A stretch of 37,104 nt of DNA from NCBI GenBank assembly GCA_002269645.1, contig NIVC01001107.1, positions 1 through 37,104 on the forward strand, given 5' to 3'. Positions 8,595 through 32,520 of the stretch are shown here, one piece after another (position 1 is the stretch's first letter; each line of letters starts with the position of its first letter). A program made the translations under genes and the position numbers. Below the pieces are notes generated by a model that saw nothing but the letters and a program-made list of their open reading frames with translations, was not told where the DNA came from and did no database searches. This stretch comes from Macrostomum lignano (Eukaryota).

Positions 8595-9084
8595 TCCTAT
8601 ATACTAAAAATGGTCTGTCTGTGTCTATGTGATCGATTAGAGAAAAAATGGCTGGACCGATTTTTTTCAAACTTGCACTGTTCGATCAGAAATTTTCCCG
8701 TGACTGTACATGCATCGTGGCTAAGAAATTGTTCGATGCTAAAGGCATTAAATATTCGAAAAACATGCTTTTTTGCAAAGGTCAAGCAAACTTTTCGACT
8801 TGAAATGCATTGTAAGAATGCTAGAGAAAAAACTGACTGGTTAAATTCTGATTCTGAAATAGATTGCATCATAGCTGAATTGTAACTCCAGCTTGAATTG
8901 CGTCGCAGTATTGAAAATGCGGTGTGGAAGCGTAGCACCAGACTTGATTTAGATTGCGTAACCATATTCTCAACTTTAATTGAGACTGATACTGACTTGC
9001 CTGGGAAATTGATTATGTCATAACTGCTTCGCGAGTAAGTGTTGAATTATATAAGTGCTACAATTTCATTTATAAATTCGATAA

Positions 9085-9150
9085 GAGCTAGCCTAGATGT
9101 GAACAGACTGGACTGCAAATGCAGCGACCTGGGTTCGAATCTTAGTAGTG
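9085..9150 (+). pseudogene. tRNA-derived (SINE-head-like) segment in the Helitron 5' module; copies at 20365-20430, 16813-16875 and (diverged) 6050-6110
   Basis: A-box-like TAGCCTAGATG, arm ctgga-CTGCAAA-tgcag (GCA anticodon position) and T-arm ctggg-TTCGAAT-cttag with B-box GGTTCGAATC. No convincing acceptor stem. Confidence 0.6.
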
Positions 9151-9159
9151 GAAAGTTTG

Positions 9160-9270
9160 AATCATGGCAAAACCAGAGTTTGAATCATGGCTAAACGAGA
9201 GTCTGACTCATGGCTAAACCAGAGTTTGAATCATGGCTAAACCAGAGTTTGAATCATTGCAAAACCAGTT
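9160..9270. repeat. 23-bp repeat (aaaccagagtttgaatcatggct), ~4-5 copies
   Basis: Direct reading. Confidence 0.85.
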
Positions 9271-9692
9271 TTGTTAAAAGTGATACTGATTATCACTGAT
9301 ATTGATGATATCACTGATATCAGTGATACTGGTAACTCTGATAAGAATTTCACTATGTCAAAAGTACATAGCTGTATCAACCCCACTGGCGAGACAGTCA
9401 TAAATAGATTACATTCACAGTTTTTTTCACTGGCTGGCGCAGACCAGTGTACATTGTGAGCCCTCTGCCCCGGAATTTGGACACACGGGCCTGGAGAGCC
9501 CACACCCCAAATCATAGGTTTTTTAGATTTAGACCCCTTTCTTCTTTATCGATTTTTCAGTTTCTACCCTGCGTCTTAAGATAAGCTCCAATTCAGCCCA
9601 CTGGATGATAAATAGCCTGTAATAGTTTGGCTCAAGGGCACCTTATCTGATTCTTCAGACATCCAAATTCACAAACTTTCATCTTTCAAACC

Positions 9693-10700
9693 TTAGAATC
9701 TCTTAGATCCCAATCCTAAATTCATAGAATCTCTTATATCCCAATCCTAAATTCACAGAATCTCTTAGATCCCAATCCTAAATTCACAGAATCTCTTAGA
9801 TCCCAATCCTAAATTCATAGAATCTCTTAGATCCCAATCCTAAATTCACAGAATCTCTTAGATCCCAATCCTAAATTCATAGAATCTCTTATATCCCAAT
9901 CCTAAATTCATAGAATCTCTTAGATCCCAATCCTAATCTCATAGAATCTCTTAGATCCCAATCCTAATCTCATAGAATCTCTTAGATCCCAATCCTAAAT
10001 TCATTGAATCTCTTAGATCCCAATCCTAAATTCACAGAATCTCTTAGATCCCAATCCTAAATTCACAGAATCTCTTAGATCCCAATCCTAAATTCACAGA
10101 ATCTCTTATATCCCAATCCTAAATTCATTGAATCTCTTAGATCCCAATCCTAATCTCATTGAATCTCTTAGATCCCAATCCTAAATTCATAGAATCTCTT
10201 AGATCCCAATCCTAAATTCATTGAATCTCTTAGATCCCAATCCTAATCTCATTGAATCTCTTAGATCCCAATCCTAAATTCATAGAATCTCTTAGATCCC
10301 AATCCTAAATTCACAGAGTCTCTTAGATCCCAATCCTAAATTCATGGGATCTCTTAGATCCCAATCCTAAATTCATAGAATCTCTTAGATCCCAATGCTA
10401 AATTCTTAGAATCTCTTAGATCCCAATCCTAAATTCACAGAATCTCTTAGATCCCAATGCTAAATTCAGAGAATCTCTTAGATCCCAATCCTAAATTCAT
10501 AGAATCTCTTATATCCCAATCCTAAATTCTTAGAATCTCTTAGATCCCAATCCTAAATTCACAGAATCTCTTAGATCCCAATGCTAAATTCACAGAATCT
10601 ATTAGATTCCAATCCTAAATTCATAGAATCTCTTAAATCCCAATCCTAAATTCATAGAATCTCTTAGATCCCAATCCTAAATTCACAGAATCTTATATAT
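9693..10700. repeat. 31-bp minisatellite (agaatctcttagatcccaatcctaaattcat), ~32 copies
   Basis: Direct reading. Confidence 0.95.
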
Positions 10701-10814
10701 CAATCCTAGATCATTGCTTAGCCTAATTGGGTTCATTGCATAACAGAACTAAGATCATTGCTTAGCGTAATTGGGATCATTTGGCATAACTAAGTTGGGA
10801 TCCTTGCATACTAA

Positions 10815-11256
10815 ATTGGGATCAAGGCAAACCAGAATAGGATCGGATACAATCGGATCCCAATTTAGTTGTGCCATGAAAGTTAATAAGTAATAGTGAA
10901 ATTAATGTAGGTAAATATTAGGTGAATATATAGCAGGTTGGCTGCATATCAATGGGCCTTGAGATTGTGGTTGAAATAACGTGTTCGCTGCTTTTTCACG
11001 ATTCAGAGGTTCTTCCACTCTAAAACTGAGGGTATGCAGCCATGAGAGAGAGGTTTGAAGCAGCTTCAGCAAACCTAGAGACTTGTGATAGCTAAGCTTT
11101 TTGTGTGACGTTGAGTGCGTGAACTTAACTTGCCCCAGTGAATGCCTCTGACCAGCAGTGCAGAGTAAAGCAAGCCAACAAGCAGTAGGATTGACACCAT
11201 TATTCTTGCAGTCAAATGCAATGAACTGTGCAATGATACTGTCTTGTTGGCGGAGC
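10815..11256 (+). repeat. 442-bp direct repeat, copy 1 (copy 2 at 15709-16150)
   Basis: Read as identical by eye from attgggatcaagg to ttggcggagc. Confidence 0.92.
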
Positions 11257-11682
11257 AATCTGCGAATTCATCATCTCTACTGTCTTTGTAAGTAAGTATT
11301 CACAAAGCAATTATTAAACTCATCAGTTGTCATTGAATTCCCTTATTTATAATATGTTATTTTGCATACTTTCATATGGATGTTTGTTTAGTTAAAAACT
11401 TTCAATTAAGCTCCAAAACTTCATTATAGGTTCTAAATTGATCATAGCAATGAGCTGTGTCAGTTAAGTTTCTTATTTTCATTTAGGAGTAAGAAAAAGC
11501 AACACGAAACACTTATTTATCCAGTAAACAGAATTATTTATTTTATTTATTTAGAATTCTTTAAATTCTCAAACACATAAATAAAAAAATCAAGAAATCA
11601 TATCAAGTTAATTCCACAAACAAATTGAATTTAATTATTCCGCTGCTGCTGCTGCTGCGGCTGTTGCTTTCTTTTCTTTTCT

Positions 11683-11734
11683 TCACTCCGACCTCCGACC
11701 GCCCGCAGGCGGCCGGGGCGGGGCCGGGTGCGGC

Positions 11735-11778
<44 letters not shown>

Positions 11779-11779
11779 C

Positions 11780-11823
<44 letters not shown>

Positions 11824-12065
11824 CTGCTGCTGCAGCCGCATGTCGGCCAGGTCCGGACACCGGGCCACAGGGTGACCTCCACCGCAGAGATAACAGGCCA
11901 CTGTTAAGTTTGGAAAGTGCAATTTTACTCAACAGGTGGTTTCGAAAGACTTAATTACAGTAATGATACTTAGAAATGAGACTTACTAGGTTTTCTAGGG
12001 TGTCCACCACCGCGGCCTCCTCGCCGCCTGCCGCCGCCGGAAAAGAAGTTCTGGGTAAACTTCAT
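11683..12065 (-). CDS. Small 2-exon nucleic-acid-binding-like protein (~98 aa): RGG-rich segment, CX2CX3HX4C zinc knuckle, Q33 tract; exons 12065-11987 and 11900-11683
   Basis: ATG at 12065 gives MKFTQNFFSGGGRRRGGRGGGHPRKP. An 86-bp GTAAGT...TTAACAG intron (phase 1) joins it to MACYLCGGGHPVARCPDLADMRL-Q33-PHPAPP. TATATAAA lies 75 bp upstream and AATAAA downstream (~11540). A 1-nt shift would extend the C-terminus to ...EEKKRKQQPQQQQQRNN (stop at 11631). Confidence 0.68.
11735..11834. repeat. (CTG/TTG)n microsatellite = poly-Gln codons on the minus strand
   Basis: 33 CAG/CAA codons. Confidence 0.95.
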
Positions 12066-12138
12066 TTGTGGAACAGTGGAGTTAAACAGTGGAACTATAC
12101 AGTGGAAATTATACGAGCGTGTCGTACGCTCACTCTGG

Positions 12139-12789
12139 TTTATATACGCTCACTCATGTCAAGCAAGGATTAGCGAGATTGGTTTGAAAACCTTGCTAAC
12201 GAAATGAAACTCATTTCATTTTTTTAAAGCCCGTTTCAGCTTAGGCAAAAATGAATACCAGCTTAGGGCCACCCCCAACCCCAGTTAAAATCGTGTGAGG
12301 CTTCATTGGTGAGCGTCATGAGGCTTTAGCTGTTTGTGATTACTGAAAAGTCGCACTAGGTTGGGGCTTGCACTGGCAGTTTAATGAAATCACTTTAGTT
12401 GAATACAAAGTTTACTGCTATTGGCTGACTTGAAACCCTCTATTTTTAGCCACGTTAGCCACACGCCGCACTGGCTTCCCAATTACAGTGTACATTTAAG
12501 ATCTTTTTTGTGTCCTATTATTGAAGTGTGTCGAAAACAGATTGCATAACAAGTCGCACCACACTCGACTCTGACACCCCACACAGTGTACATAAAGAAA
12601 GAACGTAAAAGCTAAGGCAATCACCAGCCAATCCACAACAAGTAGCCCAGTGGGTGGATTAGAACAAAACTCTCTCTGATTGGTTAGCCAGATCTAAATT
12701 GATCTTTACATGGCACCCTCTATTGGCATGAGTCATCACAGTTAGGGTTGTCCGAAACGAAATGCTGCAATATAAACTGGCACAATTGG
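12139..12789. promoter_or_regulatory. Putative bidirectional Pol II promoter
   Basis: TATATAAA on - (12146-12139) and TATAAA on + (12771-12776). CCAAT/ATTGG at 12178, 12305, 12420, 12479, 12628, 12679, 12722 and 12785. TGAGTCA at 12729. Confidence 0.6.
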
Positions 12790-12882
12790 CCTTGATGCTA
12801 AAACTATCAAACCACAAACCGTAAAGACCTTATCAGTGAAATTTTTATAATCCATATTTTTGGCAACTATCAATCGAGCAAT

Positions 12883-14291
12883 ATGGAGTCAACCGAAGGA
12901 GCCAAGAAAAGCAAAGCGTGTATCTCTGCTCTGCTTCCGGGCCTGATGCACGCTGCAATCGTTGGCCTCGTAATGAGGCTGTCCAAAATCACGGACTTTG
13001 AAGGCAAAAGAGGACCAGGCCAAGTGTTTTCCTTTATCCTCTGTGACGACACCGGCGATATACGTGTAAGCGTGTTCGGAAAGGATCTTAAGCCTTTCCT
13101 GGAGGTGTGTCGTGAGGGCGTCGCCGTCCGCATATCCGGCGGCTGGGTGAAGAAGGCGGATCCCAAATACAGCACTACGGACAATGAGCACGAGCTAACA
13201 GTTTCAATTGACCAACGTGGAACCATTGTGAGGACCCTCGAGACCGTCACTCGACGTGCACCAAGCTATAAGAAGATAAAAGAGATTTCGGACTGTGAAA
13301 TGAAAATGTAAGTTAACTTGTTGCAATTGTTAAAAATAAAATGGAAAGGATTTGGAATATATATTCCCACTAAATGTTAGGTTAGCCAATTATTTCTAGG
13401 GAAACTTATTTAAATCAGTCAGTGAAGTTGCTTAGTGAATGAGTTAATGCATTCTTGTAAGTTCACCCTTTGCCTCACATATCTCAGGAATGTTAACGTC
13501 TATGGCACGATTTCTGCTGTCCAGAAACCAACGGAAGTTAAAACCGGTTCCGGAAAACTTATCAACCTGGCGAAAGTGACGCTTGTTGATCAGTCTGGGT
13601 CCTCCGTGTCGTGCACATTTTGGGCCAGCTCTACTGCCCAAGTGAATGACTGGTCTGTGGGCGACGTTCTAGCGATTCATGGTGCTCAAGTCCAGGAATA
13701 TTCCCAGACAATCAGTCTCGGATGTTCGAAAGCGGAAATTCAGCATTGGCCAGAAGACTCTGCTGATGTCTCCGACATTACCCAGTGGTACAAGGATGCG
13801 CTTTCTAGCCAACAGTGCTTCGAGGAGCTACGGGTGACGCAAAGCTCCCAGCGGGAGAAATATGCTAACCGTGACGACGAAATGGTATTACAGTACCCAG
13901 AGCGAATGTTCGACCAATTCGATGAGGTGCGAAGAATTAAAGTGCGATTTGGGGACAAAGAGGTAAGTTGATTTTACGAGTATTACGTGTGGGTTAAATA
14001 GAAATATGGTGTCAGAGAACGTACTAAAGAAGCAATAAGTGATTGACTGCTTAGATTCATTATTAACTTGTTCAATGAGGCCTCTTATCTCTAAAGATTA
14101 GGTTTATTCATTCATTCAAGAGTAATATGAATATAAAAAATTGATTAAATTCATATATAAATTTCATTTCACAGGTGACATTTTCCCGAGATCATATCAA
14201 CAGAAGTCAGCAGATCCCCGCTATGTCAACCCCTAAGGCTCCCAATGTGTCCGAGAAGCCTGGGCCATCACATGATTTCATGGACGAGTAG
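12883..14291 (+). CDS. RPA70 (RPA1)-like single-stranded DNA-binding protein, OB folds A and B only, 3 exons (12883-13307, 13488-13962, 14175-14291), 338 aa
   Basis: GQVFSFILCDDTGDIRVSVF, VKKADPKYS...ELT, VTLVDQSGSSVSCTFW and VLAIHGAQVQEY parallel human RPA1 DBD-A/B as I recall them. GT-AG introns in phase (2,0); no frameshift; AATAAA at 14305. Lacks RPA70N and the DBD-C Zn ribbon. Confidence 0.88.
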
Positions 14292-14469
14292 GACTTGAAA
14301 GACTAATAAAGATGCAATTAACGTGAGTAATGCTTGAGTGCATTTTTGTCTGCCAGTAGCGCATCTGAGTTCGATAGCCATCACAAGTAGTTTAACCTGA
14401 TATGTATAATACGGCCCGATGAGACGTATCAGGTAAATCCTGCTTTATTCACCTAATAAATTAAAATTA

Positions 14470-15710
14470 GATGGGATCATAATGGAATTGGGATCAGTGA
14501 TTAGCTAAGCAAAATGATTAGCTAAATTGTGTTCATTGCATAACAGAACTGAGATCATTGCTTAGCGAAATTGGGTTCATTGCATAACAGAACTGAGATC
14601 ATTGCTTAGTTAAATTGGGTTTATGGCATTACAGAACTGAGAGCATTGCTTAGCTAAATTGGGTTCATTGCTTGTTCATTGGGTTCACAGAATCTCTTAG
14701 ATCCCAATCCTAAATTCATAGAATCTCTTAGATCCCAATCCTAAATTCATGGGATCTCTTAGATCCCAATCCTAAATTCACAGAATCTCTTAGATCCCAA
14801 TCCTAAATTCATAGAATCTCTTAGATCCCAATGCTAAATTCTTAGAATCTCTTAGATCCCAATCCTAAATTCACAGAATCTCTTAGATCCCAATGCTAAA
14901 TTCACAGAATCTATTAGATTCCAATCCTAAATTCATAGAATCTCTTAAATCCCAATCCTAAATTCATAGAATCTCTTAGATCCCAATCCTAAATTCATAG
15001 AATCTCTTAGATCCCAATCCTAAATTCACAGAATCTTATATATCAATCCTAAATCATTGCTTAGCTAAATTGTGTTTGTGGCATAACAGAAGTGAGATCA
15101 TTGCTTAGCTAAATTGTGTTTGTGGCATAACAGAAGTGAGATCATTGCTTAGCCTAATTGGGTTCATTGCATAACAGAACTAAGATCATTGCTTAGCGTA
15201 ATTGGGATCATTTGGCATAACTAAGTTGGGATCCTTGCATACTAAATTGGGATCATAGCAAACCAGAATTGGAATTATCGCATAATGAAATTGGGCTCAT
15301 AGCATGATACGAATGGGATCATTGAAGAATGGAAAATTGGATTCATAGTTTACCAGAATTATGATTAGTAAGAGGGGCGTCCGTAAGGTAATGAAAATTT
15401 TCTGCTACGAGTTGGGATCAAGGCAAACCAGAATAGGATCGGATTGGGTTCCCAATAGCCAATTGGGTTCCCAACCCAATAGCTAAATTGTGTTTGTGGC
15501 ATAACAGAAGTGAGATCATTGCTTAGCTAAATTGTGTTTGTGGCATAACAGAAGTGAGATCATTGCTTAGCCTAATTGGGTTCATTGCATAACAGAACTA
15601 AGATCATTGCTTAGCGTAATTGGGATCATTTGGCGTAACTAAAATGGGATTATTGCATAACTAAATTGAGATCCTTTCATAACTAGATTGAGATCATTGC
15701 ATAACTAGAT
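14470..15710. repeat. 44-bp repeat family (gcataacagaactgagatcattgcttagctaaattgggttcatt) in blocks 14500-14680, 15050-15250, 15480-15700; also 10710-10810
   Basis: Period 44 (gcataac at 14538 and 14582). Confidence 0.85.
14688..15050. repeat. Second array of the 31-bp minisatellite, ~11-12 copies
   Basis: Shares ordered diagnostic variants (catgggatct, caatgcta, ctattagattcc, cttatatatc) with 10330-10700. Confidence 0.93.
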
Positions 15711-16150
15711 TGGGATCAAGGCAAACCAGAATAGGATCGGATACAATCGGATCCCAATTTAGTTGTGCCATGAAAGTTAATAAGTAATAGTGAAATTAAT
15801 GTAGGTAAATATTAGGTGAATATATAGCAGGTTGGCTGCATATCAATGGGCCTTGAGATTGTGGTTGAAATAACGTGTTCGCTGCTTTTTCACGATTCAG
15901 AGGTTCTTCCACTCTAAAACTGAGGGTATGCAGCCATGAGAGAGAGGTTTGAAGCAGCTTCAGCAAACCTAGAGACTTGTGATAGCTAAGCTTTTTGTGT
16001 GACGTTGAGTGCGTGAACTTAACTTGCCCCAGTGAATGCCTCTGACCAGCAGTGCAGAGTAAAGCAAGCCAACAAGCAGTAGGATTGACACCATTATTCT
16101 TGCAGTCAAATGCAATGAACTGTGCAATGATACTGTCTTGTTGGCGGAGC
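15709..16150 (+). repeat. 442-bp direct repeat, copy 2
   Basis: See 10815-11256. Confidence 0.92.
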
Positions 16151-16929
16151 CTTCTGCAAGTGCATCATGTTTACTGTTTGTGGGTAATATTTTTAGGTGC
16201 AATGCAATTTTTTCTTTTTTCATTGTACTGAATCCCATTACTGTCCCATTACTGTCGTTTTCTGACATTACTCAGTAGTCACAACTTGTTTCTGTCGAAA
16301 AAATAATTTAACAAACGAAAGAGGAAAATCGCTGAATTCTCTACATTTGGAGTTTGTTTTCTTATAATGTCATAATGATATGTATTTGTATAATAATAAT
16401 TTTGCCAGATGCTCACTCAATTGTTGTTGTTTTGTTGTTTTCAATGTGTTTTGCAATTGAAGAAATACAAAAAATGTTTCAGTGGACAAAGACCAGTCCC
16501 ATGATTCATGAATCTGCACACCTGGTACCTGCCTTATTCTATTTTAAAAGATAAATTGTCAGGCATGCATTTATAATGAAGAATGATACAAAATGGATTA
16601 CTAAGAAAAGAGGTCAGATGAGAAATAGGATCTGATCAGAACTGGAATCATTAAGAAAAAGAAAGGAGATTAGAAATTGATCCATTGATATTTAATTAGC
16701 CATTGATATGGCTAATTAAATGATATGGTATGATATGGCTATAAATTACTTTTTACTCTAACCGATTTGCTATAAGAATTAAATTATAAGGGCCACAATT
16801 CAAGACAAGAGATAGCATAGATGCGAACAGACTGGACTGCTAATGCTGCGACCTGGGTTCGAATCTTAGTAGTGCAAAAAGATTTTTTTATTCAAAAACC
16901 TTAAAAACACAAAATGCTAAACACAAAAA

Positions 16930-19310
16930 AGCACAATGTCAAACATTAAAGAGCCACCATGTCAAACATTAAAGAGCCACCATTTCAAACCTAAAAGAGC
17001 CACCATGTCGAACATTAAAGAGCCACCATGTCAAACAATAAAGAGCAACCAGGTCAAACATATACATGACTCCATGTCGAACATTGAAGAGCCACCATGT
17101 CAAACATTAAAGAGCCACCATGTCAAACATATACATGACGCCATGTCGAACATAAAAGAGCCACCATGTCGAACATTAAAAAGCCACCATGTCAAACATT
17201 AAAGAGCCACCATTTCAAACCTAAAAGAGCCACCATGTCGAACATTAAAGAGCCACCATGTCAAACATTAAAGAGCAACCAGGTCAAACATATACATGAC
17301 TCCATGTCGAACATTGAAGAGCCACCATGTCGAACATTAAAGGGCCACCATGTCAAATATTAAAGGGCCACCATGTCAAATATTAAAGAGCCACCATGTC
17401 AAACATTAAAGAGCCACCAGGTCAAACATGAAAGTGCCACCATGTCTAACATTAAAGAGCCACCATGGCAAAAATATACATGACTCTATGTCGAACATTC
17501 AAGAGCTACCATGTCAAACATATACATGACTCCATGTCAAACATTAAAGAGACACTATGTCAAACATTAAAGAGCCACCAGGTCAAACATGAAAGTGCCA
17601 CCATTTAACACATTAAAGAGCCACCATGTCGAACATTTAAGAACCACCATGTCAAACATAAAATAGCCACCATGTGAAACATATACGTGACTCCATGTAA
17701 AACATTAAAGAGCTACCATTTCAGACATATACATGACTCCATGTCAAACATATACGTGACTCCATGTTAGACATTAAAGAGCCACCATGTCGAACATTAA
17801 AGAGCCAACATGTTAAAAATACAAGAGCCACCATGTCAAACATATACATGACTCCATGTCAAACATTGAAGAGACACCATGTCGAACATAAAAGAGCCAC
17901 CATGCAAAACATAAAAGAGCCACCATGTCTAACATTAAAGAGCCACCATGGCAAACATATACATGACTCCATGTCAAACATTGAAGAGCCACCATGTTAA
18001 ACATATACATGACTCCATGTCAAACATTAAAGAGACACTATGTCAAACATTAAAGAGCCACCATGTCAAACATATACATGACTCCATGTTGAACATTCAA
18101 GAGCTACCATGTCAAACATATACATGACTCCATGTTGAACATTCAAGAGCTACCATGTCAAACATATACATGACTCCATGTCAAACATTGAAGAGCCACC
18201 ATGTCGAACATAAAAGGGCCACCATGTCAAATATTAAAGAGCCACCATGTTAAACATTAAAGAGACACCAGGTCAAACATGAAAGTGCCACCATGTAAAA
18301 CATTAAAGAGCCACCATGTCGAACATTTAAGAACCACCATGTCAAACATAAAATAGCCAACATGTGAAACATATACGTGATTCCATGTAAAACATTAAAG
18401 AGCTACCATATCAGGCATATGCATGACTCCATGTCAAACATATAACGTGACTCCATGTTAGACAATTAAGAGCTACCATTTCGAACATTAAAGAGTCAAC
18501 ATGTTAAAAATACAAGAGCATCCATGTCAAACATATACATGACTCCATGTCAAACATTGAAGAGACACCATGTCGAACATAAAAGAGCCACCATGCAAAA
18601 CAAAAAAGAGCCACCATGTCTAACATTAAAGAGCCACCATGTCAAACATATACATGACTCCATGTCGAACATTACAGAGCCACCATGTCAAAGATAAAAG
18701 AGCCACCATGTCAAACATAAAAGAGCCACCATGTTCAATATTAAAGAGCCACCAGGTCAAACATGAAAGTTCCACCATGTAAAACATTAACGAGCCACCA
18801 TGTAAAACATATACGTAACTCCATGTCAAACATTGAAGCGACACCATGCCGAACATAAAAGAGCCACCATGTCGAACATAAAAGAGCTACCATGTCAAAC
18901 ATTAAAGAGCCACCATGTCTAACATTAAAAAGCCACCATGTCCAACATTAAAGAGCCACCATGTCAAAAAGTAAAGAGCCACCTTTTTGAACATTAAAGA
19001 GCCACCATGTCAAACATAATAGAGCCACCATGTCAAACATAATAGAGCCACCATGTCAAACATAATAGAGCCACCATGTCAAACATTAAAAAGCCACTTT
19101 GTCAAACATAGAAGAGCCCCCATGTCAAACATAGAAGAGCCCCCATGTCAAACATAGAAGAGCCACCATGTCAGACATTGAAAAGCCACCGTATCAAACA
19201 TAAAAGAGTTACCATGTACGAGCGTAGAACAAAAAAGAGCCACAATGTATAACATAAAAGAGCCACCCTGTTAAACATAAAAGATACACAATTTCAAACG
19301 TAAAAGTAAG
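16930..19310. repeat. 23-bp minisatellite with two monomer types (aaagagccaccatgtcaaacatt / atatacatgactccatgtcaaac), ~100 copies
   Basis: Direct reading. Confidence 0.95.
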
Positions 19311-19371
19311 CGAATTTTAAAGGAGCCGCTATAATGCTAAGGAAATTGTCGCACTAGCTACTTATTGTCTG

Positions 19372-19730
19372 GTGGATGCTTACTATTTGGGGATGCTATC
19401 TATCTTGGGGATGCTTGCTATCTTGGGATGCTTCTATCTGGGGGACGCTTGCTATCTGGGGATGCTTGCTATCCGGGGATGCTTGCTATCTGGGGGATGC
19501 TTGCAATCTGGGGGATGCTTGCTATCTGAGGGATGCTTGCTATCTGGGGATGCTTGCTATCTTGGGGATGCTTGCTATCTGAGGGATGCTTGCTATCTGG
19601 GGGATGCTTGCTATCTGGGGGATGCTTGCTATCTGGGGGATGCTTGCTATCCGGGGGATGCTTGCTATCTGGGGGATGCTTGCTATCTGGGGGACGCTTG
19701 CTATCTGGGGGATGCTTGCGGTCTTGGGAT
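19372..19730. repeat. 18-19-bp G-rich minisatellite (gggggatgcttgctatct)
   Basis: Direct reading; same family at 33545-34335. Confidence 0.93.
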
Positions 19731-19839
19731 GATTTCTTTTTGCAATGCACTTCATTTGAGCAGTTTGTCTGTTGTCTTTTTGAAGGATTTTTGGCTGTTT
19801 TTTTGTTACTTGTAGAGAACAGAGATTCTATCCAGATGT

Positions 19840-19866
19840 CCCCCATCGGGGGGCGAAGATTGCGAG
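19840..19866 (+). terminator. Degenerate Helitron 3' terminus of unit A (ccccc-atc-gggggg ... gattgCGAG)
   Basis: Aligns with 34555-34583 (cccc-gaa-ggggg ... gattgCTAG); followed directly by TCC. Confidence 0.65.
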
Positions 19867-20477
19867 TCCTATATACTAAAAATGAAAATCTTGCTTGTTT
19901 GTTTGTACGCAATCGATTAGAGAAAAAATGGCTGGACCGATTTTCATGAGACTTGCACTGTTCGATCAGAAATTTTCCCGTGACGGTACATGCATCTTGG
20001 CTAAGAAATTGCTCCATGTTAAAGCGATTAAATATTCGAAAAACATGCTTTTTTGGAAAGGTCAAGCAAACTTTTCGACTTGAAATGCATTGTAATAATG
20101 CTAGAGAAAAAACTGACTGGTTAAATTCTGATTCTGAAATAGATTGCATCATAGCTGAATTGTAACTCCAGCTTGAATTGCGTCGCAGTATTGAAAATGC
20201 GGTGTGGAAGCGTAGCACCAGACTTGATTTAGATTGCGTAACCATATTCTCAACTTTAATTGAGACTGATACTGACTTGCCTGGGAAATTGATTATGTCA
20301 TAACTGCTTCGCGAGTAAGTGTTGAATTATATAAGTGCTACAATTTCATTTATAAATTCGATAAGAGCTAGCCTAGATGTGAACAGACTGGACTGCAAAT
20401 GCAGCGACCTGGGTTCGAATCTTAGTAGTGGAAAGTTTTTTAATAAAAGCTTTTATTCAAGGACAAATAAAGGACAA

Positions 20478-22290
20478 AAGGCGTCATGTAAAAAAATCAT
20501 AGAAGTGTCATGTAAACAATCATAGAAGCGTCATGTAAACCATCATAGAAGCGTCATGTAAACCATCATAGAAGTGTCATGTAAAAAATCATAGAAGCGT
20601 CATGTAAACCATCATAGAAGCGTCATGTAAAAAATCATAGAAGCGTCATGTAAACAATCATAGAAGCGTCATGTTAAAATAATATAAGCGTCATCTAAAA
20701 TCATAGAAGCGTCATGTAAACAATCATAGAAAAGTCATGTAAAAAATCATAGAAGCTTCATGTAAAAAATCATAGAAGCGTCATGTAAAAAATCATAGAA
20801 GCGTCATGTAAACAATCATAGAAGCGTCATGTAAAAAAATCATAGAAGCCTCATGTAAAAAATCATAGAAGCGTCATGTAAAAAATCATAGAATCGTCAT
20901 GAAAAAATCATAGAAGCGTCATGTAAACAATCATAGAAGCGTCATGTTGAAAATCATATAAGCGTCATGTAAAAAATCATAGAAGCGTCATGTAAACAAT
21001 CATCGAAGCGTCATCTAAAAAGTCATAGAAGCGTCATGTAAACAATCATAGAAGCGTCATGAAAAAATCATAGGAGTGTCATGAAAAAATCATAGAAGCG
21101 TCATGTAAACAATTATAGAAGCGTCATTTAAAAAAATCATAGAAGCGTCATGTAAACGATCATAGAAGCGTCATGTAAAACTCATAGAAGCGTCATTTAA
21201 AAAAATCATAGAAGCGTCATGTAAACAATCATAAAAGCGTCATGTAAACAATCATAGAAGCGTCATGTAAAAAATCATAGAAGCGTCATGTAAAAAGCAT
21301 AGAAGCGTCATTTAAAAAAATCATAGAAGCGTCATGTAAACGATCATAGAAGCGTCATGTAAAACTCATAGAAGCGTCATTTAAAAAAATCATAGAAGCG
21401 TCATGTAAACAATCATAGAAGCGTCATGTAAACAATCATAGAAGCGTCATGTAAAAAATCATAGAAGCGTCATGTAAAAAGCATAGAAGCGTCATGTAAA
21501 AAGCATAGAAGCGTCATATAAAACTCATAGAAGCGTCATTTAAAAAAATCATAGAAGCGTCATGTAAACAATTATAGATGCGTCATGTAAAAATCATTGA
21601 AGCGTCATGTAAACAATCATAGAAGCGTCATATAAAAATCATAGAAGCGTCATGTAAACAATCATAGAAGCGTCATGTAAACCATCATAGAAGCGTAATG
21701 TAAAAAATCATAGAAGCGTCATCTAAAAATCATAGAAGTGTCATGTAAACAATCATAGAAGCGTCATGTAAAAAATCATAGAAGCGTCATGTAAACCATC
21801 ATAGAAGCGTCATGTAAACCATCGTAGAAGCGTAATGTAAACAATCATAGAAGCGTCATCTAAAATCATAGAAGCGTCATGTAAACAATCATAGAAGCGT
21901 CATGTTAAAAATCATAGAAGCGTCATGTAAACAATCATAGAAGCGTCATGTAAACCATCATAGAAGCGTAATGTAAAAAATCATTGAAGCATCATGTATA
22001 AAGCATAGAAGCGTCATGAAAAAATCATAGAAGCGTCATGTAAACAATCATCGAAGCGTCATCTAAAAAGTCATAGAAGCGTCATGTAAACAATCATAGA
22101 AGCGTCATGAAGAAATCATAGGAGTGTCATGAAAAAATCATAGAAGCTTCATGTAAACAATCATAGAAGCGTCATGAAAAAATCATAGAAGCCTCATTAA
22201 AAACTAATGAAAGTGTCATTTAAAAAATCAAGAAGCATCATGGTAGAATAAAAGAAGCGTCATGTCAGACATGAAAGGTGTCATGTAAAA
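20478..22290. repeat. 23-bp minisatellite (catagaagcgtcatgtaaaaaat), ~78 copies
   Basis: Direct reading. Confidence 0.95.
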
Positions 22291-22299
22291 ATTAAATGA

Positions 22300-23060
22300 A
22301 GCTATAGTGCTGGGCTAGGGAGAAAAACTGAGACGTCAAGGCTCACAGAGAATAACTGAGATTACGCGGGGGGGGGGGGGTTTCTGAGATGTCAAAGCAA
22401 AAGTCAGAAGCTGCTTCAAAGTTCATGTACTTTACTCAATTTTTTTATTACATTCTTTTTTGGCTCGCCACAGGGGGGGCGCTGATAGAAGAAGAGTCAT
22501 GTAAAAAATAAAAGTAGCACAATGTATACATAAAAGAAGAGTCATGTCGAAGTTAAAAGATTCATTTGGGAATTGCTACGATGTCAAAGCTTGGTGGAAA
22601 TCGTTATAGTGCTGTGATTCTTAAAGAAGGAATCACTAAAATGTCAAGGCTTAGGGGAGAAGAATTGCTGAGATTTCAAGACTTTAGGTTGGGTTAAAGT
22701 TAGGTTTAGGTCAGGTTTGGGTTGAGGGTTAGATTTTATCGGGTTTCAAGGTTAACGGGGGGTTTTTTAGATTTCAAGGTTTATGGAGGCCATCGCTGAC
22801 ATGTCAAGGCTTACGGGGGGAATAGCTGACATGTCAAGGCTCACGGGGGTATAAATGAGATTTCAAGGCTAAAGTCAGAAGCTACATGTAGTTTATTGAA
22901 AACTTTTTATTACATTATTTGATGCCTCCTCAGGGGAGGGATCGCTGATAAAAAAGCGTAATGTAAAAAATAAAAGAAGCTTCATGTCGAAGTGAAGAGA
23001 TGCATTTGGGAATCCCTACGATGTCGAGGCTTGCAGGGAATCGCTATAATGCTGTAGTAG
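22300..23060. repeat. Degenerate duplication (22385-22615 vs 22857-23055) with ~25-bp gctgacatgtcaaggcttacggggg subrepeats
   Basis: Shared aaagtcagaagct, ttattacatt, catttgggaat..ctacgatgtc, tataatgctg. Confidence 0.7.
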
Positions 23061-23637
23061 CGCTATAATGACTCTTTATATACTCATTGTATGCTCTCCC
23101 ATATCGCAAACCCCTACTTTATAGCAACTCCACAATTCAAGCCAGAGCCATTGATAAAGCAAGGAGGGTCTGCTCAGTGTTGCGTAATAAATTCCAATAC
23201 TTATATGCTCTTGGTTGATATTGAATTCAATATAATTATTACCTTAGCTTACTCAGCGTGCCGTATCCAGACGCTGAATTAGCGATAAGCTTTTTAGCTC
23301 AGGACAGATGTACACATATTTGAAACCCCAAACACTGGAGTCACGAGCGCTCAATTCATTGAAATTGCCGCGCACATTTCATTCACTTTGAATGTGCTTT
23401 TAAGGCAAGACTTTAGCCTGCCTCTTGAACTGGGTTTTCTATAAAGATTCATCGCATCAGCAAAATCTCAGCTTAATAATCCTCTCACCTACCTTTATTA
23501 GTACATTGACAACTACTGTCTTGATTAAACAGTTTCTGCCTACACCATTTGATCCATAACTGAGATGTCTTCTGGTATCTGATACTAATTATCTACTGAA
23601 TCGCCATTTATTATTTACTTTTTTACATTAAACTATT

Positions 23638-23866
23638 CATTTCATACTTTAGTACCGCAGTTGTATAATTATATTTGTAATTATTCATTCATACTTTAGT
23701 ACCGCAGTTGTATAATTATATTTGTAATTATTCATTCATACTTTAGTACCGCAGTTGTATAATTACATTTGTAATTATTCATTCATACTTTAGTACCGCA
23801 GTTGTATAATTACATTTGTAATTATTCATTCATACTTTAGTACCGCAGTTGTATAATTATATTTGT
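23638..23866. repeat. 47-bp tandem repeat, ~4.8 copies, ~105 bp upstream of the RepHel ATG
   Basis: catactttagt at 23643, 23690 etc. Confidence 0.92.
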
Positions 23867-23971
23867 AAAAAGTAGCAACTACTATTACAACTAGATTAAA
23901 CTTTTATTCCGTATTCTTTTTACCGTATTTCGTATATTTCTATCCGTACTTACTAAGTATCAATAATAGCT

Positions 23972-29900: not shown

Positions 29901-30890
29901 AGCGCTACTCGAGACTTCTGATTCAGGTGGGATGTACACTGTACTTTTTATACCGTACTTTTGATTGCTGTAGGTTGTTTATTTTCTACCTGGCTTTTCT
30001 GATAATAGATTACGTAACCAGTGATTTTTGATATCTAAAACCAACTGTTATTTATGATTATACTTATCAAGTCTTTATGTTGGAAACGTAATTTTGCTTT
30101 CTCTTTTATCCGTTTTTCGTTCACAGATCGGTTCTGGTTTGGTCCCAGAAGATTCGGACGGAAACATTTCGCTGCCTGCCAAGATCTTGTTGCCAGCAGA
30201 GGCCAGCCTGACGGACCTTATCAAATTCGTTTATCCGTCATTTGAGGCCTCGGCGGAGAGAGAGGTCTACTTGCAAATAGAGCCATCCTGGCACCCTACA
30301 ATGACTCCGTCAATGCCATCAATGAGCACTGCCTGGCCATGTTCCCTGGGACACAGCGCGAGTACCGATCAGTGGACAGCGTTGCAGACGAGGATTCGGC
30401 AACTCACTTCCCGCCCGAGTTGCTGAACCAGCTCGATGCGCCAAATTTTCCAACGCACCTGCTGAGACTCAAAGTTGGCATGCCAATTGTGCTCCTGCGC
30501 AACCTCAACCCACCGCGGCTTTGCAACGGCACCCGACTCATTATCCTAGCGCTGGGCGAGAACGTGCTGCGCTGCAAAGTGGCTGCCGGCCAGTTCACCG
30601 GCGATGAGATCCTGCTGCCGCGGATCCCTCTGGTGCCGAACAACGCGGACCTGCCCGTAGCATTCAAACGGCTGCAGTTTCCGGTGAAGCCAAGCTTTTG
30701 CCTGACTATCCACAAGTCCCAGGGGCAGAGCTTGGAGACTGTCGGCATTGACCTGACTGTGGGATGCTTTGCTCACGGACAGCTCTACACTGCTCTGTCT
30801 CGAGCCAAGAATGCAGCGAATATCCGGGTCAGGATGCCGGGAACCACGACAAAGAACGTCGTTTATCCAGAGATTCTCACACGAGATTAG
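23972..30890 (+). CDS. Helitron RepHel (OTU protease + Zn finger + HUH Rep + Pif1-family SF1B helicase), 9 exons, ~1762 aa: 23972-24450, 24731-25341, 25670-26262, 26354-27123, 27264-27606, 27810-28116, 28250-29271, 29531-29926, 30127-30890
   Basis: Rep/N motifs: CKFCGALRW..E..CC..GKV, RRYNLPT, GKPDLFVTATCNPKWPEI, EYQKRGLPHVH, WVVPYN, KYIIKY. Helicase motifs: APAGSGKT, IVWDEISM, GDFRQLLPV, LKVGMPIVLLRNLN, RLQFPV...TIHKSQGQSL, HGQLYTALSR. All 8 introns are GT-AG with consistent phases. Four -1 frameshifts (~24793, ~25860, ~29791, ~30271); correcting them gives 5289 nt = 1763 codons. Confidence 0.93.
24070..24420 (+). repeat. Coding 69-bp (23-aa) repeat ETDAERAARLEELRQRDAERRAC, ~5 copies, in RepHel exon 1
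   Basis: Period 69 (24104 to 24173); charged helical repeat of the kind seen at animal RepHel N-termini. Confidence 0.85.
24785..25150 (+). other. OTU-type cysteine protease (deubiquitinase-like) domain of RepHel
   Basis: VP(H)DGNCFFHAVCDQL (catalytic D-x-x-C) and VVRLVLSNEHYESL (catalytic His). Confidence 0.8.
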
Positions 30891-32059: not shown

Positions 32060-32520
32060 GATGGGGGAATACTATTGATATGGGAATGCTGTTCATGGGG
32101 CAATGCTGCTGGTGGGGGAATGCTTTGGATTCTTTGGATTGGGATTATTTGGACGGGGGTTTGGACGGGGGTCAATTATTTTTTGATGGGGGATTATTTG
32201 GATGGGGATTATTTTTGGAGGAGGGATTCTCTTTGGATATGGATGGAATGAGGGATTGGGGGATTTTTTGGATAGGGATGAATGGGGGATTCTTCGGATA
32301 GGGATGGATTGGGGGATTCTTTGGATGGGGATTCTCTGGATGAGGAATTTTTTGGATTGAGATTCTTTGAAATGAAGCTTCTGTGTATGCGGGATTCCTG
32401 GTATATGGGATTCATTGGATGGGGAATTCTCCGGATCGGGATTCTATCGATGAGGGTTCTTTGGATGGGGGATTCTTTGCATGTGAGATTCTTTGCATCG
32501 GGGATTTTATGGATGGGGAA
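32060..32520. repeat. Degenerate ~16-bp G-rich repeat (gggggattctttggat)
   Basis: Direct reading; related to the 18-bp family. Confidence 0.8.

What the first reader, a model, noticed from the sequence alone, without database searches (positions are those of the whole stretch)
11631..14310. Hidden divergent gene pair inside a Helitron: RPA70-like SSB plus an RGG / zinc-knuckle / poly-Q micro-protein on a shared promoter
Seen: splicing an 86-bp GTAAGT..TTAACAG intron turns two GC-rich patches into a ~98-aa ORF (RGG segment, CYLCGGGHPVARC, Q33). It sits head-to-head with an intact 3-exon RPA70 A+B gene, 817 bp apart, with a TATA box facing each gene. The ORF track misses its first exon. Known: RPA-like genes occur in some Helitrons (mainly plant); RGG boxes and CCHC knuckles bind or chaperone single-stranded nucleic acid; CX2CX3HX4C spacing is typical of BEL/Pao gag knuckles. 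Inference: a co-expressed two-gene ssDNA-handling module that serves the RepHel of the adjacent unit, i.e. a three-protein rolling-circle system. I do not know of this combination being described.
Basis: partly seen in the sequence, partly recalled or inferred. Interest (0 to 1): 0.85.

Follow-up and report, generated by a model that had tools for sequence, protein, structure and literature searches.

The report
Flatworm Helitron's two-gene accessory cassette

Summary
An 86-bp intron joins two GC-rich patches into a 98-aa ORF (RGG, CYLCGGGHPVARC, Q33). It sits 817 bp head-to-head with an intact 3-exon RPA70 DBD-A/B gene.

- **Location:** the pair lies inside a canonical Helitron unit (5' TC at 8595; hairpin plus CGAG at 19840-19866). 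This unit has no RepHel. It abuts head-to-tail a second unit (19867-32573) that carries RepHel.
- **Conservation:** the head-to-head pair recurs in all 6 loci of this RPA clade where upstream DNA is available. These are the window, four M. lignano contigs and one unrelated Logan contig.
- **Same unit as RepHel:** in M. lignano the pair sits in the same unit as RepHel; RepHel is full-length in two of the four copies.
- **Coding evidence:** the four zinc ligands, the phase-1 intron just before the knuckle and a polyQ tract are conserved. Window versus Logan copy gives pN 0.33 against pS 0.81.
- **RPA-like protein:** dN/dS is about 0.15, and the AF2 model matches RPA70 A/B.

The micro-protein has no hit among 5.8 billion proteins or in the Helitron papers I searched.

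**Caveats:** function and expression are untested, and the window's own RepHel carries an 8-bp frameshift.

**Verdict:** a new variant of a known kind, namely a Helitron with a new accessory gene.

The parts
8595..19866 (+). Helitron unit I (11.27 kb). It has canonical termini and no RepHel, and it carries the accessory gene pair.
   Evidence: The 5' end TCCTATATACTAAAAATG at 8595 and the hairpin plus CGAG at 19840-19866 align with ends in M. lignano loci. No RepHel-like ORF lies inside the unit.
8595..9158 (+). Conserved 5' terminal region of the Helitron ('A').
   Evidence: It is 95% identical to 19865-20438 and 89% to 32620-32865. It is 88% identical to M. lignano L001.
11631..11639 (-). 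Candidate polyadenylation signals (AATAAT/ATTAAA) of the micro-gene.
   Evidence: Read directly from the sequence, about 45 nt after the stop codon. Inference only.
11683..11900 (-). Micro-gene exon 2: zinc knuckle CYLCGGGHPVARC, Q33, Pro-rich tail and stop codon.
   Evidence: Translation. The knuckle and following residues are conserved in L007, and the four ligands also in M. lignano.
11901..11986 (-). Micro-gene intron: 86 nt, GTAAGT...AACAG, phase 1.
   Evidence: A phase-1 intron sits at the same place, 1-2 codons before the first Cys, in L007 (97 nt) and in M. lignano L001 (135 nt).
11987..12065 (-). Micro-gene exon 1: MKFTQNFFSGGGRRRGGRGGGHPRKP.
   Evidence: The orthologous exon in L007 reads MKIINNFYGSPSPFGRRRRRGGREGKKK.
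12066..12882 (.). Divergent promoter region of 817 bp. TATATA at 12141-12146 faces the micro-gene and TATAAA at 12771-12776 faces the RPA gene. It holds 8 CCAAT/ATTGG boxes.
   Evidence: CCAAT boxes: 8 observed against 1.8 expected (P about 0.0015). TATA spacing (-76/-112) is similar in M. lignano L001 (-90/-110).
12883..13307 (+). RPA-like gene exon 1 (OB fold A).
   Evidence: Pfam PF01336 covers residues 26-102. The AF2 model has pLDDT above 95 here.
13488..13962 (+). RPA-like gene exon 2 (OB fold B plus the conserved C-terminal region).
   Evidence: Pfam PF16900 covers residues 132-215. The first intron lies at the same position in the protein alignment in L001, L002, L003 and L007.
14175..14291 (+). 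RPA-like gene exon 3 and stop codon. AATAAA follows at 14305-14310.
   Evidence: The motif VTFSRD... is conserved in P0001 and P0002.
10708..11300 (+). Direct repeat B flanking the pair. Its partner lies at 15601-16191.
   Evidence: 94% identity over 596 bp. It has no counterpart in the M. lignano loci.
19840..19866 (+). 3' terminus of unit I: hairpin CCCCCATCGGGGGG, a 9-nt spacer, then CGAG (CTAG in the other copies).
19867..32573 (+). Helitron unit II (12.7 kb) carrying RepHel. It lies head-to-tail with unit I.
   Evidence: 5' TC end at 19867 and hairpin plus CTAG at 32548-32573.
23972..30887 (+). Multi-exon RepHel gene (STPRs, OTU-like, Helitron_like_N, PIF1 helicase). It is disrupted by an 8-bp insertion at about 25838-25845.
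   Evidence: Pfam hits. It is 62-86% aa identical, piece by piece, to M. lignano RepHel. The frameshift is seen against 6 copies.
32574..34583 (+). Helitron unit III: a short non-autonomous copy (about 2 kb).
   Evidence: 5' end-like sequence at about 32574 and hairpin plus CTAG at 34555-34583.

Best explanation
Shown:
- Window 8595-34583 is a head-to-tail array of three canonical (HLE1-type) Helitron units of a Macrostomum flatworm.
- Unit I has lost or never had RepHel, but keeps a self-contained two-gene cassette. The two genes are transcribed outward from an 817-bp CCAAT-rich region with one TATA box facing each gene.
- Gene 1 encodes a 338-aa protein made of the two central ssDNA-binding OB folds of RPA70 (DBD-A and DBD-B) plus a conserved C-terminal region of unknown fold.
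- Gene 2 encodes a 98-aa, largely low-complexity protein with one CCHC-type zinc knuckle flanked by an Arg/Gly-rich segment and a polyQ tract.
- The cassette is an ancestral part of this Helitron clade, not a passenger of this one copy. In M. lignano it sits between the same termini as a RepHel that is full-length in two of four copies. In another genome (Logan run SRR24204725) the same pair occurs with the same intron and the same knuckle spacing.

Inferred:
- Both proteins are element-encoded helpers that act in trans on any copy with matching termini.
- RepHel nicks at the 5' TC end and its Pif1-type helicase peels off one strand.
- The RPA-like protein coats and protects the displaced strand or circle without needing the host RPA trimer.
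- The knuckle protein acts like a retroviral nucleocapsid-type chaperone or adaptor. It could bind single-stranded nucleic acid through the knuckle and basic flanks, help or stabilise the short GC hairpin that signals termination, or concentrate the components through its polyQ and basic disordered regions.
- Unit I would thus be a RepHel-dependent copy that still supplies the two helpers.
For: Termini: the 5' TCCTATATACTAAAAATG end and the CCCCCnnnGGGGG hairpin plus CTAG recur at 10 junctions. One is a solo insertion flanked A|TC...CTAG|T (L002).

RepHel domains: Helitron_like_N, PIF1, Pif1_2B and STPRs are present. There is no endonuclease or DUF6570 domain.

RPA-like protein:
- Pfam hits score above cut-off and PDB 1jmc/1fgu give E about 2e-13.
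- The AF2 model has pLDDT 85.6, and the top Foldseek hits are RPA70 A/B (1jmc TM 0.77).
- F65, Y96, W187 and Y213 align with the four base-stacking aromatic residues of human RPA70 (alignment; residue numbers from memory).
- dN/dS is 0.14-0.17 with dS above 1.2, including the C-terminal region.

Micro-gene:
- An orthologue in L007 has the same exon/intron plan and CX2CX3HX4C spacing.
- BLASTP gives E 3e-11. pN is 0.33 against pS 0.81, and 17 of 25 identical residues use different codons.
- The M. lignano orthologue has a canonical CX2CX4HX4C knuckle after a phase-1 intron.
- The Cys, Cys, His, Cys ligands are invariant.
- The polyQ tract is encoded by mixed CAA/CAG codons (20/13) in M. lignano.

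Co-occurrence: the pair is present in 6/6 loci of this RPA clade and 0/2 loci of other RPA lineages.

Same unit as RepHel: seen in L001, L004, L005 and L006, with full-length RepHel in L004 and L006. The M. lignano RPA clade sits on at least 4 contigs at 90% identity or more.

Orientation: the cassette is inverted relative to the 3' arrays between the window and M. lignano. That fits a self-contained bidirectional module.

Mechanistic background: ssDNA intermediates, and the hairpin as terminator (PMC4778049).
Against: - There is no expression or splicing evidence. Neither the window nor the M. lignano micro-protein, spliced or unspliced, was found among 5.8 billion predicted proteins.
- Pfam zf-CCHC does not reach reporting level for either knuckle. 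PDB matches to nucleocapsid knuckles are weak (E 0.006-0.03).
- Apart from the knuckle, the M. lignano protein has a different make-up (Pro/Tyr-rich, polyQ before the knuckle, Arg-Ser tail). The flanking chemistry is therefore not conserved.
- Helraiser RepHel alone transposes in human cells (PMC4778049), so helpers are not essential.
- HELIANO's authors consider such extra genes possible ancient captures that are not essential (PMC11417382).
- Related Macrostomum Helitrons (L002, L008) do without the knuckle gene.
- Two of the four M. lignano copies have a disrupted micro-gene.
- The window's RepHel is frameshifted.
Confidence: 0.6

Rival explanations
1. The small protein works on RNA, not on the transposition intermediate. 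It would be an SR-like or RGG-type RNA-binding factor that promotes splicing, export or translation of the Helitron's own intron-rich transcripts, or interferes with host silencing. The RPA-like protein would still serve the ssDNA step.
For: - The M. lignano orthologue ends in RRRSRSRSRSRS directly after the knuckle. From memory, this is the knuckle-plus-RS arrangement of the splicing factor SRSF7.
- The window and L007 versions have Arg/Gly-rich segments, which typically bind RNA.
- One of the best gap-free matches to the window knuckle is the eIF3g knuckle (2mjc).
- RepHel has about 9 introns here.
Against: - The RS tail and the RGG segment are each lineage-specific. The only shared element is the knuckle, which binds ssDNA and RNA alike.
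- The constant head-to-head linkage is with an ssDNA-binding protein gene, not with RepHel.
Confidence: 0.2
2. The pair, or at least the micro-gene, is captured host sequence that rides along as a passenger. It would be kept intact only because the copies are young or because the host uses some copies. It has no role in transposition.
For: - Helitrons capture host genes often, and extra domains are viewed as ancient captures (PMC11417382).
- L002-type and L008-type Helitrons lack the micro-gene.
- Some copies are broken.
Against: - The cassette persisted through divergence that saturated synonymous sites (dS above 1.2 for RPA; pS 0.81 for the micro-gene). Over the same span the protein sequence, zinc ligands, intron phase and head-to-head layout were kept. 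This argues for selection over a long period within the element lineage.
- No host homologue was found for the micro-protein.
Confidence: 0.15
3. The micro-ORF is not a gene. It would be a CAG microsatellite next to a chance Cys/His pattern, perhaps within a non-coding upstream antisense transcript of the RPA promoter.
For: - The sequence is low-complexity and has no Pfam hit.
- There are no database homologues.
- The repeat tract is CAG-rich (27 of 33 codons).
Against: - The orthologous ORF in L007 has the same start (MK..NF), the same intron phase and the same knuckle, and pN is well below pS.
- The M. lignano orthologue has a canonical knuckle.
- The motif background is about 1 per 325,000 codons.
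Confidence: 0.05

Closest known systems
RPA-like genes of Helitron-like elements, for example plant Helitrons and the 358-aa RPA ORF of the mite Helentron-Mo-1A (PMC4067079). RPA is listed as a recurrent extra domain of HLE1 and HLE2 in PMC11417382.
   Same: A stand-alone protein of about 340-360 aa with RPA70 DBD-A and DBD-B, encoded next to RepHel inside the element. HELIANO reports RPA enriched downstream of RepHel in HLE1, which matches the position seen in the M. lignano copies.
   Different: - Here it has two introns and lies on the opposite strand to RepHel in the M. lignano copies.
- It carries a conserved C-terminal region with no known domain.
- It is always paired head-to-head with a second small gene.
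Canonical Helitron (HLE1), including the reconstructed Helraiser (PMC4778049).
   Same: It has a 5' TC end, a 3' CTAG preceded by a short hairpin, A|T target flanks (L002), a RepHel with a HUH Rep domain and a Pif1-type helicase, tandem head-to-tail copies, and non-autonomous derivatives that share the termini.
   Different: - Helraiser needs only RepHel, whereas this clade carries two extra genes.
- The hairpin is only a 5-bp GC stem.
- The units are packed with minisatellite arrays.
- In this window the coding functions are split over two adjacent units.
Retroviral and retroelement nucleocapsid CCHC zinc knuckles (PDB 1cl4, 2ihx, 2ec7) and the eIF3g knuckle (2mjc).
   Same: They share a Cys-X2-Cys-X3/4-His-X4-Cys pattern with Gly before the His and basic flanks. 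These are the best, though weak, sequence matches in the PDB. Nucleocapsid proteins are small, basic and disordered, and they chaperone single-stranded nucleic acids.
   Different: There is no capsid or Gag context, only a single knuckle, and a polyQ tract. The gene is its own two-exon gene in a DNA transposon. Zinc and nucleic-acid binding are untested.
SRSF7 (9G8)-type knuckle plus Arg-Ser tail (from memory, not tested).
   Same: The M. lignano orthologue has a CCHC knuckle followed directly by RS repeats.
   Different: There is no RRM domain. The RS tail is absent from the window and L007 versions.

Membership tests
Canonical Helitron (HLE1) | 5' terminus begins with TC. | tested here: met
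   TCCTATATACTAAAAATG at 8595 and 19867, and at about 32574. The same end occurs in L001, L002 and L005.
Canonical Helitron (HLE1) | 3' terminus is CTRR, preceded by a short palindrome about 10-12 nt upstream. | tested here: met
   CCCC(C)nnnGGGGG plus a spacer of about 10 nt (8-13) and CTAG at 32548-32573 and 34555-34583, and in L001, L002, L005 and L006. Unit I has CGAG at 19863-19866. The stems are only 5 bp.
Canonical Helitron (HLE1) | Insertion between A and T without a target-site duplication. | tested here: inconclusive
   This cannot be judged in the window because the units abut each other. It is met for the related solo copy L002 (tatata|TC...CTAG|tattg) and for the 3' side of L006 (CTAG|tcg).
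Canonical Helitron (HLE1) | RepHel protein with a HUH Rep domain and a Pif1-like helicase. | tested here: met
   Unit II has Helitron_like_N at E 4e-45 and PIF1 at E 5e-45, with no endonuclease. It has one frameshift. Unit I has none and is therefore non-autonomous.
RPA70 DNA-binding core (DBD-A/DBD-B OB folds) | Two tandem OB folds recognised by the family models. | tested here: met
   PF01336 scores 52 bits and PF16900 scores 47 bits; both cut-offs are 27.
RPA70 DNA-binding core (DBD-A/DBD-B OB folds) | Three-dimensional similarity to solved RPA70 A/B structures. | tested here: met
   AF2 pLDDT is 85.6. Foldseek top hits are 1fgu, 4gop_C and 1jmc, with E about 1e-18 and TM 0.77 to 1jmc.
RPA70 DNA-binding core (DBD-A/DBD-B OB folds) | Aromatic residues that stack on ssDNA bases (human F238, F269, W361, F386; numbering from memory). 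| tested here: met
   F65, Y96, W187 and Y213 align to them. W187 is invariant in the clade.
Cellular RPA70 orthologue | N-terminal DBD-F and C-terminal DBD-C with a zinc ribbon for trimer formation. | tested here: not met
   The protein is 338 aa and the OB folds start at residue 14. The C-terminal 117 aa have no Pfam or PDB match. Identity to cellular-length RPA70s is only 20-30%.
zf-CCHC zinc knuckle (PF00098) | CX2CX4HX4C spacing. | tested here: not met
   The window and L007 have CX2CX3HX4C. The M. lignano orthologue has the canonical CX2CX4HX4C. The shorter spacing occurs in eIF3g (2mjc) and in a LINE ORF1 (PMC3391268).
zf-CCHC zinc knuckle (PF00098) | Match to the Pfam model. | tested here: not met
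   No zf-CCHC hit at E of 1 or below (window) or 0.1 or below (M. lignano). The model is very short.
zf-CCHC zinc knuckle (PF00098) | Four metal ligands conserved among orthologues. | tested here: met
   Cys, Cys, His and Cys are invariant in three lineages.
zf-CCHC zinc knuckle (PF00098) | Zinc and nucleic-acid binding. | not testable with these tools
   This needs purified protein.
RGG/RG box protein | Clustered RGG repeats conserved in orthologues. | tested here: not met
   The window has RRRGGRGGG and L007 has RRRRRGGREG. The M. lignano orthologue has none.
Retroelement Gag (BEL/Pao or other) | Capsid-like domain next to the knuckle, within a retroelement. | tested here: not met
   There are no Gag-family hits and the ORF is only 98 aa. 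The gene has its own promoter, intron and stop codon inside a Helitron.

The most novel reading that the evidence does not exclude
Some animal Helitrons run a three-protein rolling-circle machine. RepHel would work with an element-encoded RPA-like strand-coating protein and with a nucleocapsid-like zinc-knuckle chaperone. The chaperone would handle the single-stranded circle or the terminator hairpin. This would be a convergence between a DNA transposon and retroelements or ssDNA viruses in their use of a small basic knuckle protein.
Probability: 0.3. Interest if true: 0.7.

Novelty: new variant of a known kind. Interest (0 to 1): 0.55.

Why it matters
Helitron transposition has been reconstituted only with RepHel. 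The role of the extra genes that many families carry is an open question, and they are often dismissed as captures.

Here, a second, unannotated accessory gene is locked head-to-head with the RPA-like gene through long divergence. That is the signature expected of a functional partner, not of a passenger.

It gives concrete, cheap experiments:
- Binding of the two proteins to the element's ssDNA and hairpin.
- The effect of each protein on transposition frequency and on read-through at the terminator.

It also shows that domain-based Helitron surveys miss small, spliced, low-complexity genes.

If the knuckle protein proves to be a chaperone for the single-stranded intermediate, it would link DNA rolling-circle transposons to the nucleocapsid strategy of retroelements.

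Tried and rejected
- **Protein database searches for the micro-protein.** I searched with the window version and with the spliced M. lignano version. Neither gave a hit, so there is no annotation and no transcript-derived evidence.
- **Pfam on both micro-proteins.** Only low-complexity noise came back.
- **AF2 of the RPA-like protein with a 4-sequence alignment.** The model was unusable (pLDDT 38.8). I repeated it with 60 sequences.
- **Global alignment of the intergenic regions of the window and M. lignano.** They are not alignable, so only motif content and spacing were compared.
- **C-terminal 117 aa of the RPA-like protein.** No Pfam or PDB sequence match was found.
- **Further relatives.** P0022 is not on record. 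L009 is too short. L003 has no upstream DNA.
- **Literature.** 'Helitron + RPA + zinc knuckle' gave 0 papers. 'Helitron + CCHC' gave 37 papers; of the 15 listed I opened only the top-ranked one, and there CCHC referred to retroelement nucleocapsids. The run accession SRR24204725 was not found. HELIANO supplements are not held.
- **Considered and rejected.** Helentron/HLE2 membership was rejected because there is no endonuclease or DUF6570 domain, and the ends are TC...CTAG. A Gag remnant was rejected because there is no capsid domain and the gene has its own structure. Ordinary host genes were rejected because the pair lies inside Helitron termini and is multi-copy.


Full report
**1. Observation**

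On the minus strand, an ATG at 12065 opens a 79-nt exon encoding MKFTQNFFSGGGRRRGGRGGGHPRKP. A GTAAGT donor at 11986 and a TTAACAG acceptor at 11901 remove 86 nt. The second exon (11900-11683) continues in phase 1 as (M)ACYLCGGGHPVARCPDLADMRL, then 33 Gln, then PHPAPPRPPAGGRRSE and a stop. The product is 98 aa.

On the plus strand, an ATG at 12883 opens a three-exon gene (12883-13307, 13488-13962, 14175-14291). Both introns run GTAAGT...CAG. The product is 338 aa. The two ATGs are 817 bp apart. TATATA (12141) and TATAAA (12771) face outward, 76 and 112 bp from the respective ATGs. Candidate poly(A) signals close both genes (11631-11639 and 14305-14310).

**2. The RPA-like gene**

- Pfam places an OB fold at residues 26-102 and REPA_OB_2 at 132-215, both above the curated cut-offs.
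- The best solved relatives are human RPA70 DBD-A/B (1jmc, 1fgu; E about 2e-13).
- In that alignment F65, Y96, W187 and Y213 fall on the four aromatic residues that stack on ssDNA in RPA70. The residue numbers F238, F269, W361 and F386 are from my memory of the 1jmc paper. The spacing of 31, 92 and 25 residues fits.
- A first AlphaFold run on four sequences failed (pLDDT 38.8).
- With a 60-sequence alignment built from the exhaustive search, the model reached pLDDT 85.6, with both OB folds above 95.
- Foldseek then returned RPA70 A/B structures as top hits (1fgu, 4gop_C, 1jmc; TM 0.77 to 1jmc).
- The protein lacks DBD-F and DBD-C, so it is not a cellular RPA70 orthologue.
- Its last 117 residues match nothing known. 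They are nevertheless as constrained as the OB folds: dN/dS is about 0.14 against M. lignano copies, with dS of 1.2-1.9.

**3. Where the window comes from, and the Helitron frame**

The closest proteins are hypothetical proteins of the flatworm Macrostomum lignano (63% and 44% identity) and a Logan contig. Non-coding repeats of the window are 88-95% identical to M. lignano contig NIVC01004209. The window is therefore M. lignano or a close relative.

A self-comparison shows many minisatellite arrays and a 570-bp segment repeated at 8593, 19865 and 32620. Aligning these copies with the M. lignano ones exposes the junction ...CCCCCAnCGGGGGG-(about 9 nt)-CTAG|TCCTATATACTAAAAATG.... This is a Helitron 3' end (short hairpin plus CTAG) abutting a Helitron 5' end (TC).

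A pattern scan gives the following ends:
- 5' ends at 8595, 19867 and about 32574.
- 3' ends at 19840-19866 (here CGAG), 32548-32573 and 34555-34583.

In M. lignano contig NIVC01000822 (L002), the same ends bound a solo 11.3-kb element flanked A|TC...CTAG|T.

The ORFs at 23957-30887 carry STPRs, a sub-threshold OTU-like segment, Helitron_like_N, PIF1 and Pif1_2B. There is no endonuclease and no DUF6570 domain. By the criteria summarised in the HELIANO paper (PMC11417382), this is an HLE1, that is, a canonical Helitron.

The window therefore holds three head-to-tail units:
- Unit I (8595-19866) carries the gene pair and no RepHel.
- Unit II (19867-32573) carries RepHel and no pair.
- Unit III (32574-34583) is short and non-coding.

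**4. Does the pair travel together?**

The M. lignano RPA cluster (at least 90% identity) has members on four contigs. I fetched all four. In every one, a two-exon gene lies on the strand opposite the RPA-like gene, about 0.9 kb upstream of its ATG where the gene is undisrupted (L001: 918 bp). It ends in ...GLCRFCLRRGHIAAECRDLPRRRSRSRS.... In every one, a RepHel gene lies convergently downstream of the RPA-like gene.

- In L004 and L006, RepHel is full-length (86% aa identity to the window's helicase C-terminus).
- In L001 and L005, RepHel is truncated.
- In L001 and L005, both termini are visible and enclose RepHel, the RPA-like gene and the knuckle gene in a single 14.4-kb unit. The 5' ends are at 20797 and 14600; the 3' ends are at 6418 and 235.
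- L006 ends with CTAG|T next to unrelated DNA.

The exhaustive HMMER search with the RPA-like protein found only eight clusters at E below 1e-30. One of them led to a 2.7-kb Logan contig (L007, run SRR24204725). Its RPA exon 1 is only 50% identical to the window's.

Upstream of it on the opposite strand, 866 bp ATG-to-ATG, lies the following:
- Exon 1: MKIINNFYGSPSPFGRRRRRGGREGKKK, phase 1.
- A 97-nt intron, GTAAGT...CTCAACAG.
- Exon 2: (I)TCYLCAGPHPVRRCPALAKQRQQQQQQQ, running off the contig end.

This has the same architecture as the window gene, the same unusual CX2CX3HX4C spacing and the same start (MK..NF).

The pair is thus present in 6 of 6 loci of this RPA clade where upstream DNA is available. 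It is absent from the two other Macrostomum Helitron types examined (L002 and L008), where the RPA-like gene follows RepHel on the same strand.

**5. Is the micro-ORF coding?**

- Window against L007: BLASTP gives E 3e-11. 25 of 50 aligned residues are identical, and 17 of those use different codons. The Nei-Gojobori proportions are pS 0.81 and pN 0.33.
- Across the three lineages, the four metal ligands are invariant. The phase-1 intron sits one or two codons before the first Cys.
- The motif is otherwise almost absent from the six-frame translations of all DNA examined: 1 other hit in about 325,000 codons.
- The polyQ tract is encoded by 27 CAG and 6 CAA in the window, with only synonymous interruptions. 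Part of that pattern is a duplicated block. In M. lignano it is encoded by 20 CAA and 13 CAG. That is not what a pure microsatellite looks like.
- Outside the knuckle, the M. lignano protein differs. It has a Pro/Tyr-rich N-terminus, the polyQ lies before the intron, and an Arg-Ser tail follows the knuckle. The conserved core is therefore one knuckle embedded in fast-evolving, basic, Gln-rich disorder.
- Pfam does not report zf-CCHC for any version. The best PDB sequence matches are retroviral nucleocapsid knuckles and the eIF3g knuckle, at weak E-values.
- Neither version has any homologue among 5.8 billion predicted proteins. Only its first exon was called as a gene, in one of the four M. 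lignano loci (L006).

**6. Promoter region**

The intergenic sequences do not align between lineages, but they share a design:
- One TATA box lies 76-112 bp before each ATG.
- CCAAT/ATTGG boxes are in excess: 8 against 1.8 expected in the window (P about 0.0015), and 5 against 1.9 in L001 (P about 0.05).

This amounts to two outward-facing core promoters with a shared CCAAT-rich spacer. Co-regulation is plausible but untested.

Relative to the 3' terminal arrays, the cassette is inverted between the window and the M. lignano family. That fits a self-contained module whose orientation within the element does not matter.

**7. Caveats specific to this window**

- The RepHel of unit II carries an 8-bp insertion at about 25838-25845. 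It shifts the frame relative to six M. lignano copies. As assembled, it is not an intact partner.
- Most other breaks between its ORF pieces have plausible GT-AG introns. I did not complete the gene model.
- The 3' end of unit I reads CGAG instead of CTAG.
- A 7-bp tandem duplication (CTCCGAC twice, 11686-11699) sits next to the micro-gene's stop codon. Without it, the ORF would run on as ...GGRSEEKKRKQQPQQQQQRNN*. The present C-terminus may therefore be a recent truncation.

**8. Mechanism**

Shown: a conserved, selected two-gene cassette inside canonical Helitrons. One product has the fold and the key residues of the RPA70 ssDNA-binding core.

Established background: Helitron transposition proceeds through a single-stranded intermediate made by the HUH nuclease and the helicase. 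The 3' hairpin acts as the terminator, and read-through occurs. RepHel alone suffices for Helraiser in human cells (PMC4778049).

Inferred:
- The RPA-like protein coats the displaced strand or circle.
- The knuckle protein acts as a nucleocapsid-like chaperone or adaptor for single-stranded nucleic acid.
- Both act in trans, so that a RepHel-less unit such as unit I still contributes helpers.

Rivals are an RNA-level role, a passive captured passenger, and a non-coding artefact. They are weighed in the rival explanations.

**9. Comparison with what is known, and novelty**

RPA-like genes in Helitron-like elements of animals are documented (PMC4067079, a 358-aa DBD-A+B ORF in a mite Helentron; PMC11417382). 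Tandem Helitron arrays and non-autonomous derivatives are also ordinary.

I could not find the following anywhere:
- in the main text of HELIANO's account of its 20 recurrent extra domains, where the word 'zinc' does not occur and none of the domains named is a zinc knuckle. The full list is in a supplementary table that was not held;
- in full-text searches;
- in protein databases.

What is missing from all of these is a small CCHC-knuckle gene paired with the RPA-like gene. Repbase consensus annotations could not be consulted.

I rate this as a new variant of a known kind. It is of moderate interest to transposon biologists, and higher if the chaperone role is confirmed.

Noticed in passing
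window 25838-25845: An 8-bp insertion (ATACGAGC) in the RepHel gene of unit II shifts the reading frame relative to six M. lignano copies. The adjacent RepHel is therefore a pseudogene, or the assembly has an error here.
   Followed up: yes
window 11686-11699: A 7-bp tandem duplication (CTCCGAC twice) sits immediately before the micro-gene stop codon. Without it, the ORF would continue as ...GGRSEEKKRKQQPQQQQQRNN*, through a basic KKRK patch and a second short polyQ.
   Followed up: partly
window 19863-19866: The 3' terminal tetranucleotide of unit I is CGAG, where all other copies have CTAG. The same unit-to-unit junction, with CTAG, is 90% conserved over 2.7 kb in M. lignano L001 (6661-4018). 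The two-unit arrangement may therefore be propagated as a composite by terminator read-through.
   Followed up: partly
window 9692-10716, 14515-15736, 16896-19307, 19351-19733, 20467-22303, 32987-34333; also 75-947, 2304-3532, 4140-5253: Large minisatellite arrays fill most of the non-coding space of the Helitron units and the left part of the window. Their periods are about 31, 44, 23 and 18 bp inside the units; the arrays in the left part of the window have periods of about 42, 33 and 50 bp. They generate many long spurious ORFs.
   Followed up: partly
window 10708-11300 and 15601-16191: A 593-bp direct repeat (94% identity) brackets the gene pair, each copy preceded by the 31-bp array. It has no counterpart in the M. 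lignano loci. It may mark a duplication or recombination that placed the cassette in this unit.
   Followed up: partly
L004 about 7600-8700 (M. lignano NIVC01000382): An ORF about 490 aa long interrupts exon 1 of the knuckle gene in this copy. I read it as a retroelement fragment (reverse transcriptase / RNase H-like) from the translation alone and did not test that. L006 has a frameshift in the Pro/Tyr-rich part of the same exon.
   Followed up: partly
L002 436-11713 and L008 about 9000-11755 (M. lignano): Related Helitron families have RepHel followed by an RPA-like gene on the same strand and then the 3' hairpin, with no knuckle gene. All RPA-like lineages share the position of the first intron. 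This suggests a single ancient acquisition of the RPA gene, followed by inversion and gain of the knuckle gene in one clade.
   Followed up: partly
P0016 / L010 (GCA_964258995.1, CAXVIE010000190.1): This is a 4022-aa gene model spanning 43 kb with 26 RPA-OB-like stretches (E 3e-118 to the window protein). It is probably an annotation that fuses many tandem Helitron RPA genes in another genome.
   Followed up: no
window 24776-25342: The RepHel N-terminal region contains an OTU-like segment (DGNCFFHA motif) that scores below the Pfam threshold (E 0.011). It is preceded by STPR repeats. OTU in HLE1 elements was reported only recently (PMC11417382).
   Followed up: partly
window 7739-7756: A second, more divergent Helitron 5'-end-like sequence (TCCAATAAACTAAAAATC, preceded by A) lies upstream of unit I. 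A partial copy of the 5' terminal region lies at 5627-5776. More degraded units probably lie to the left.
   Followed up: no
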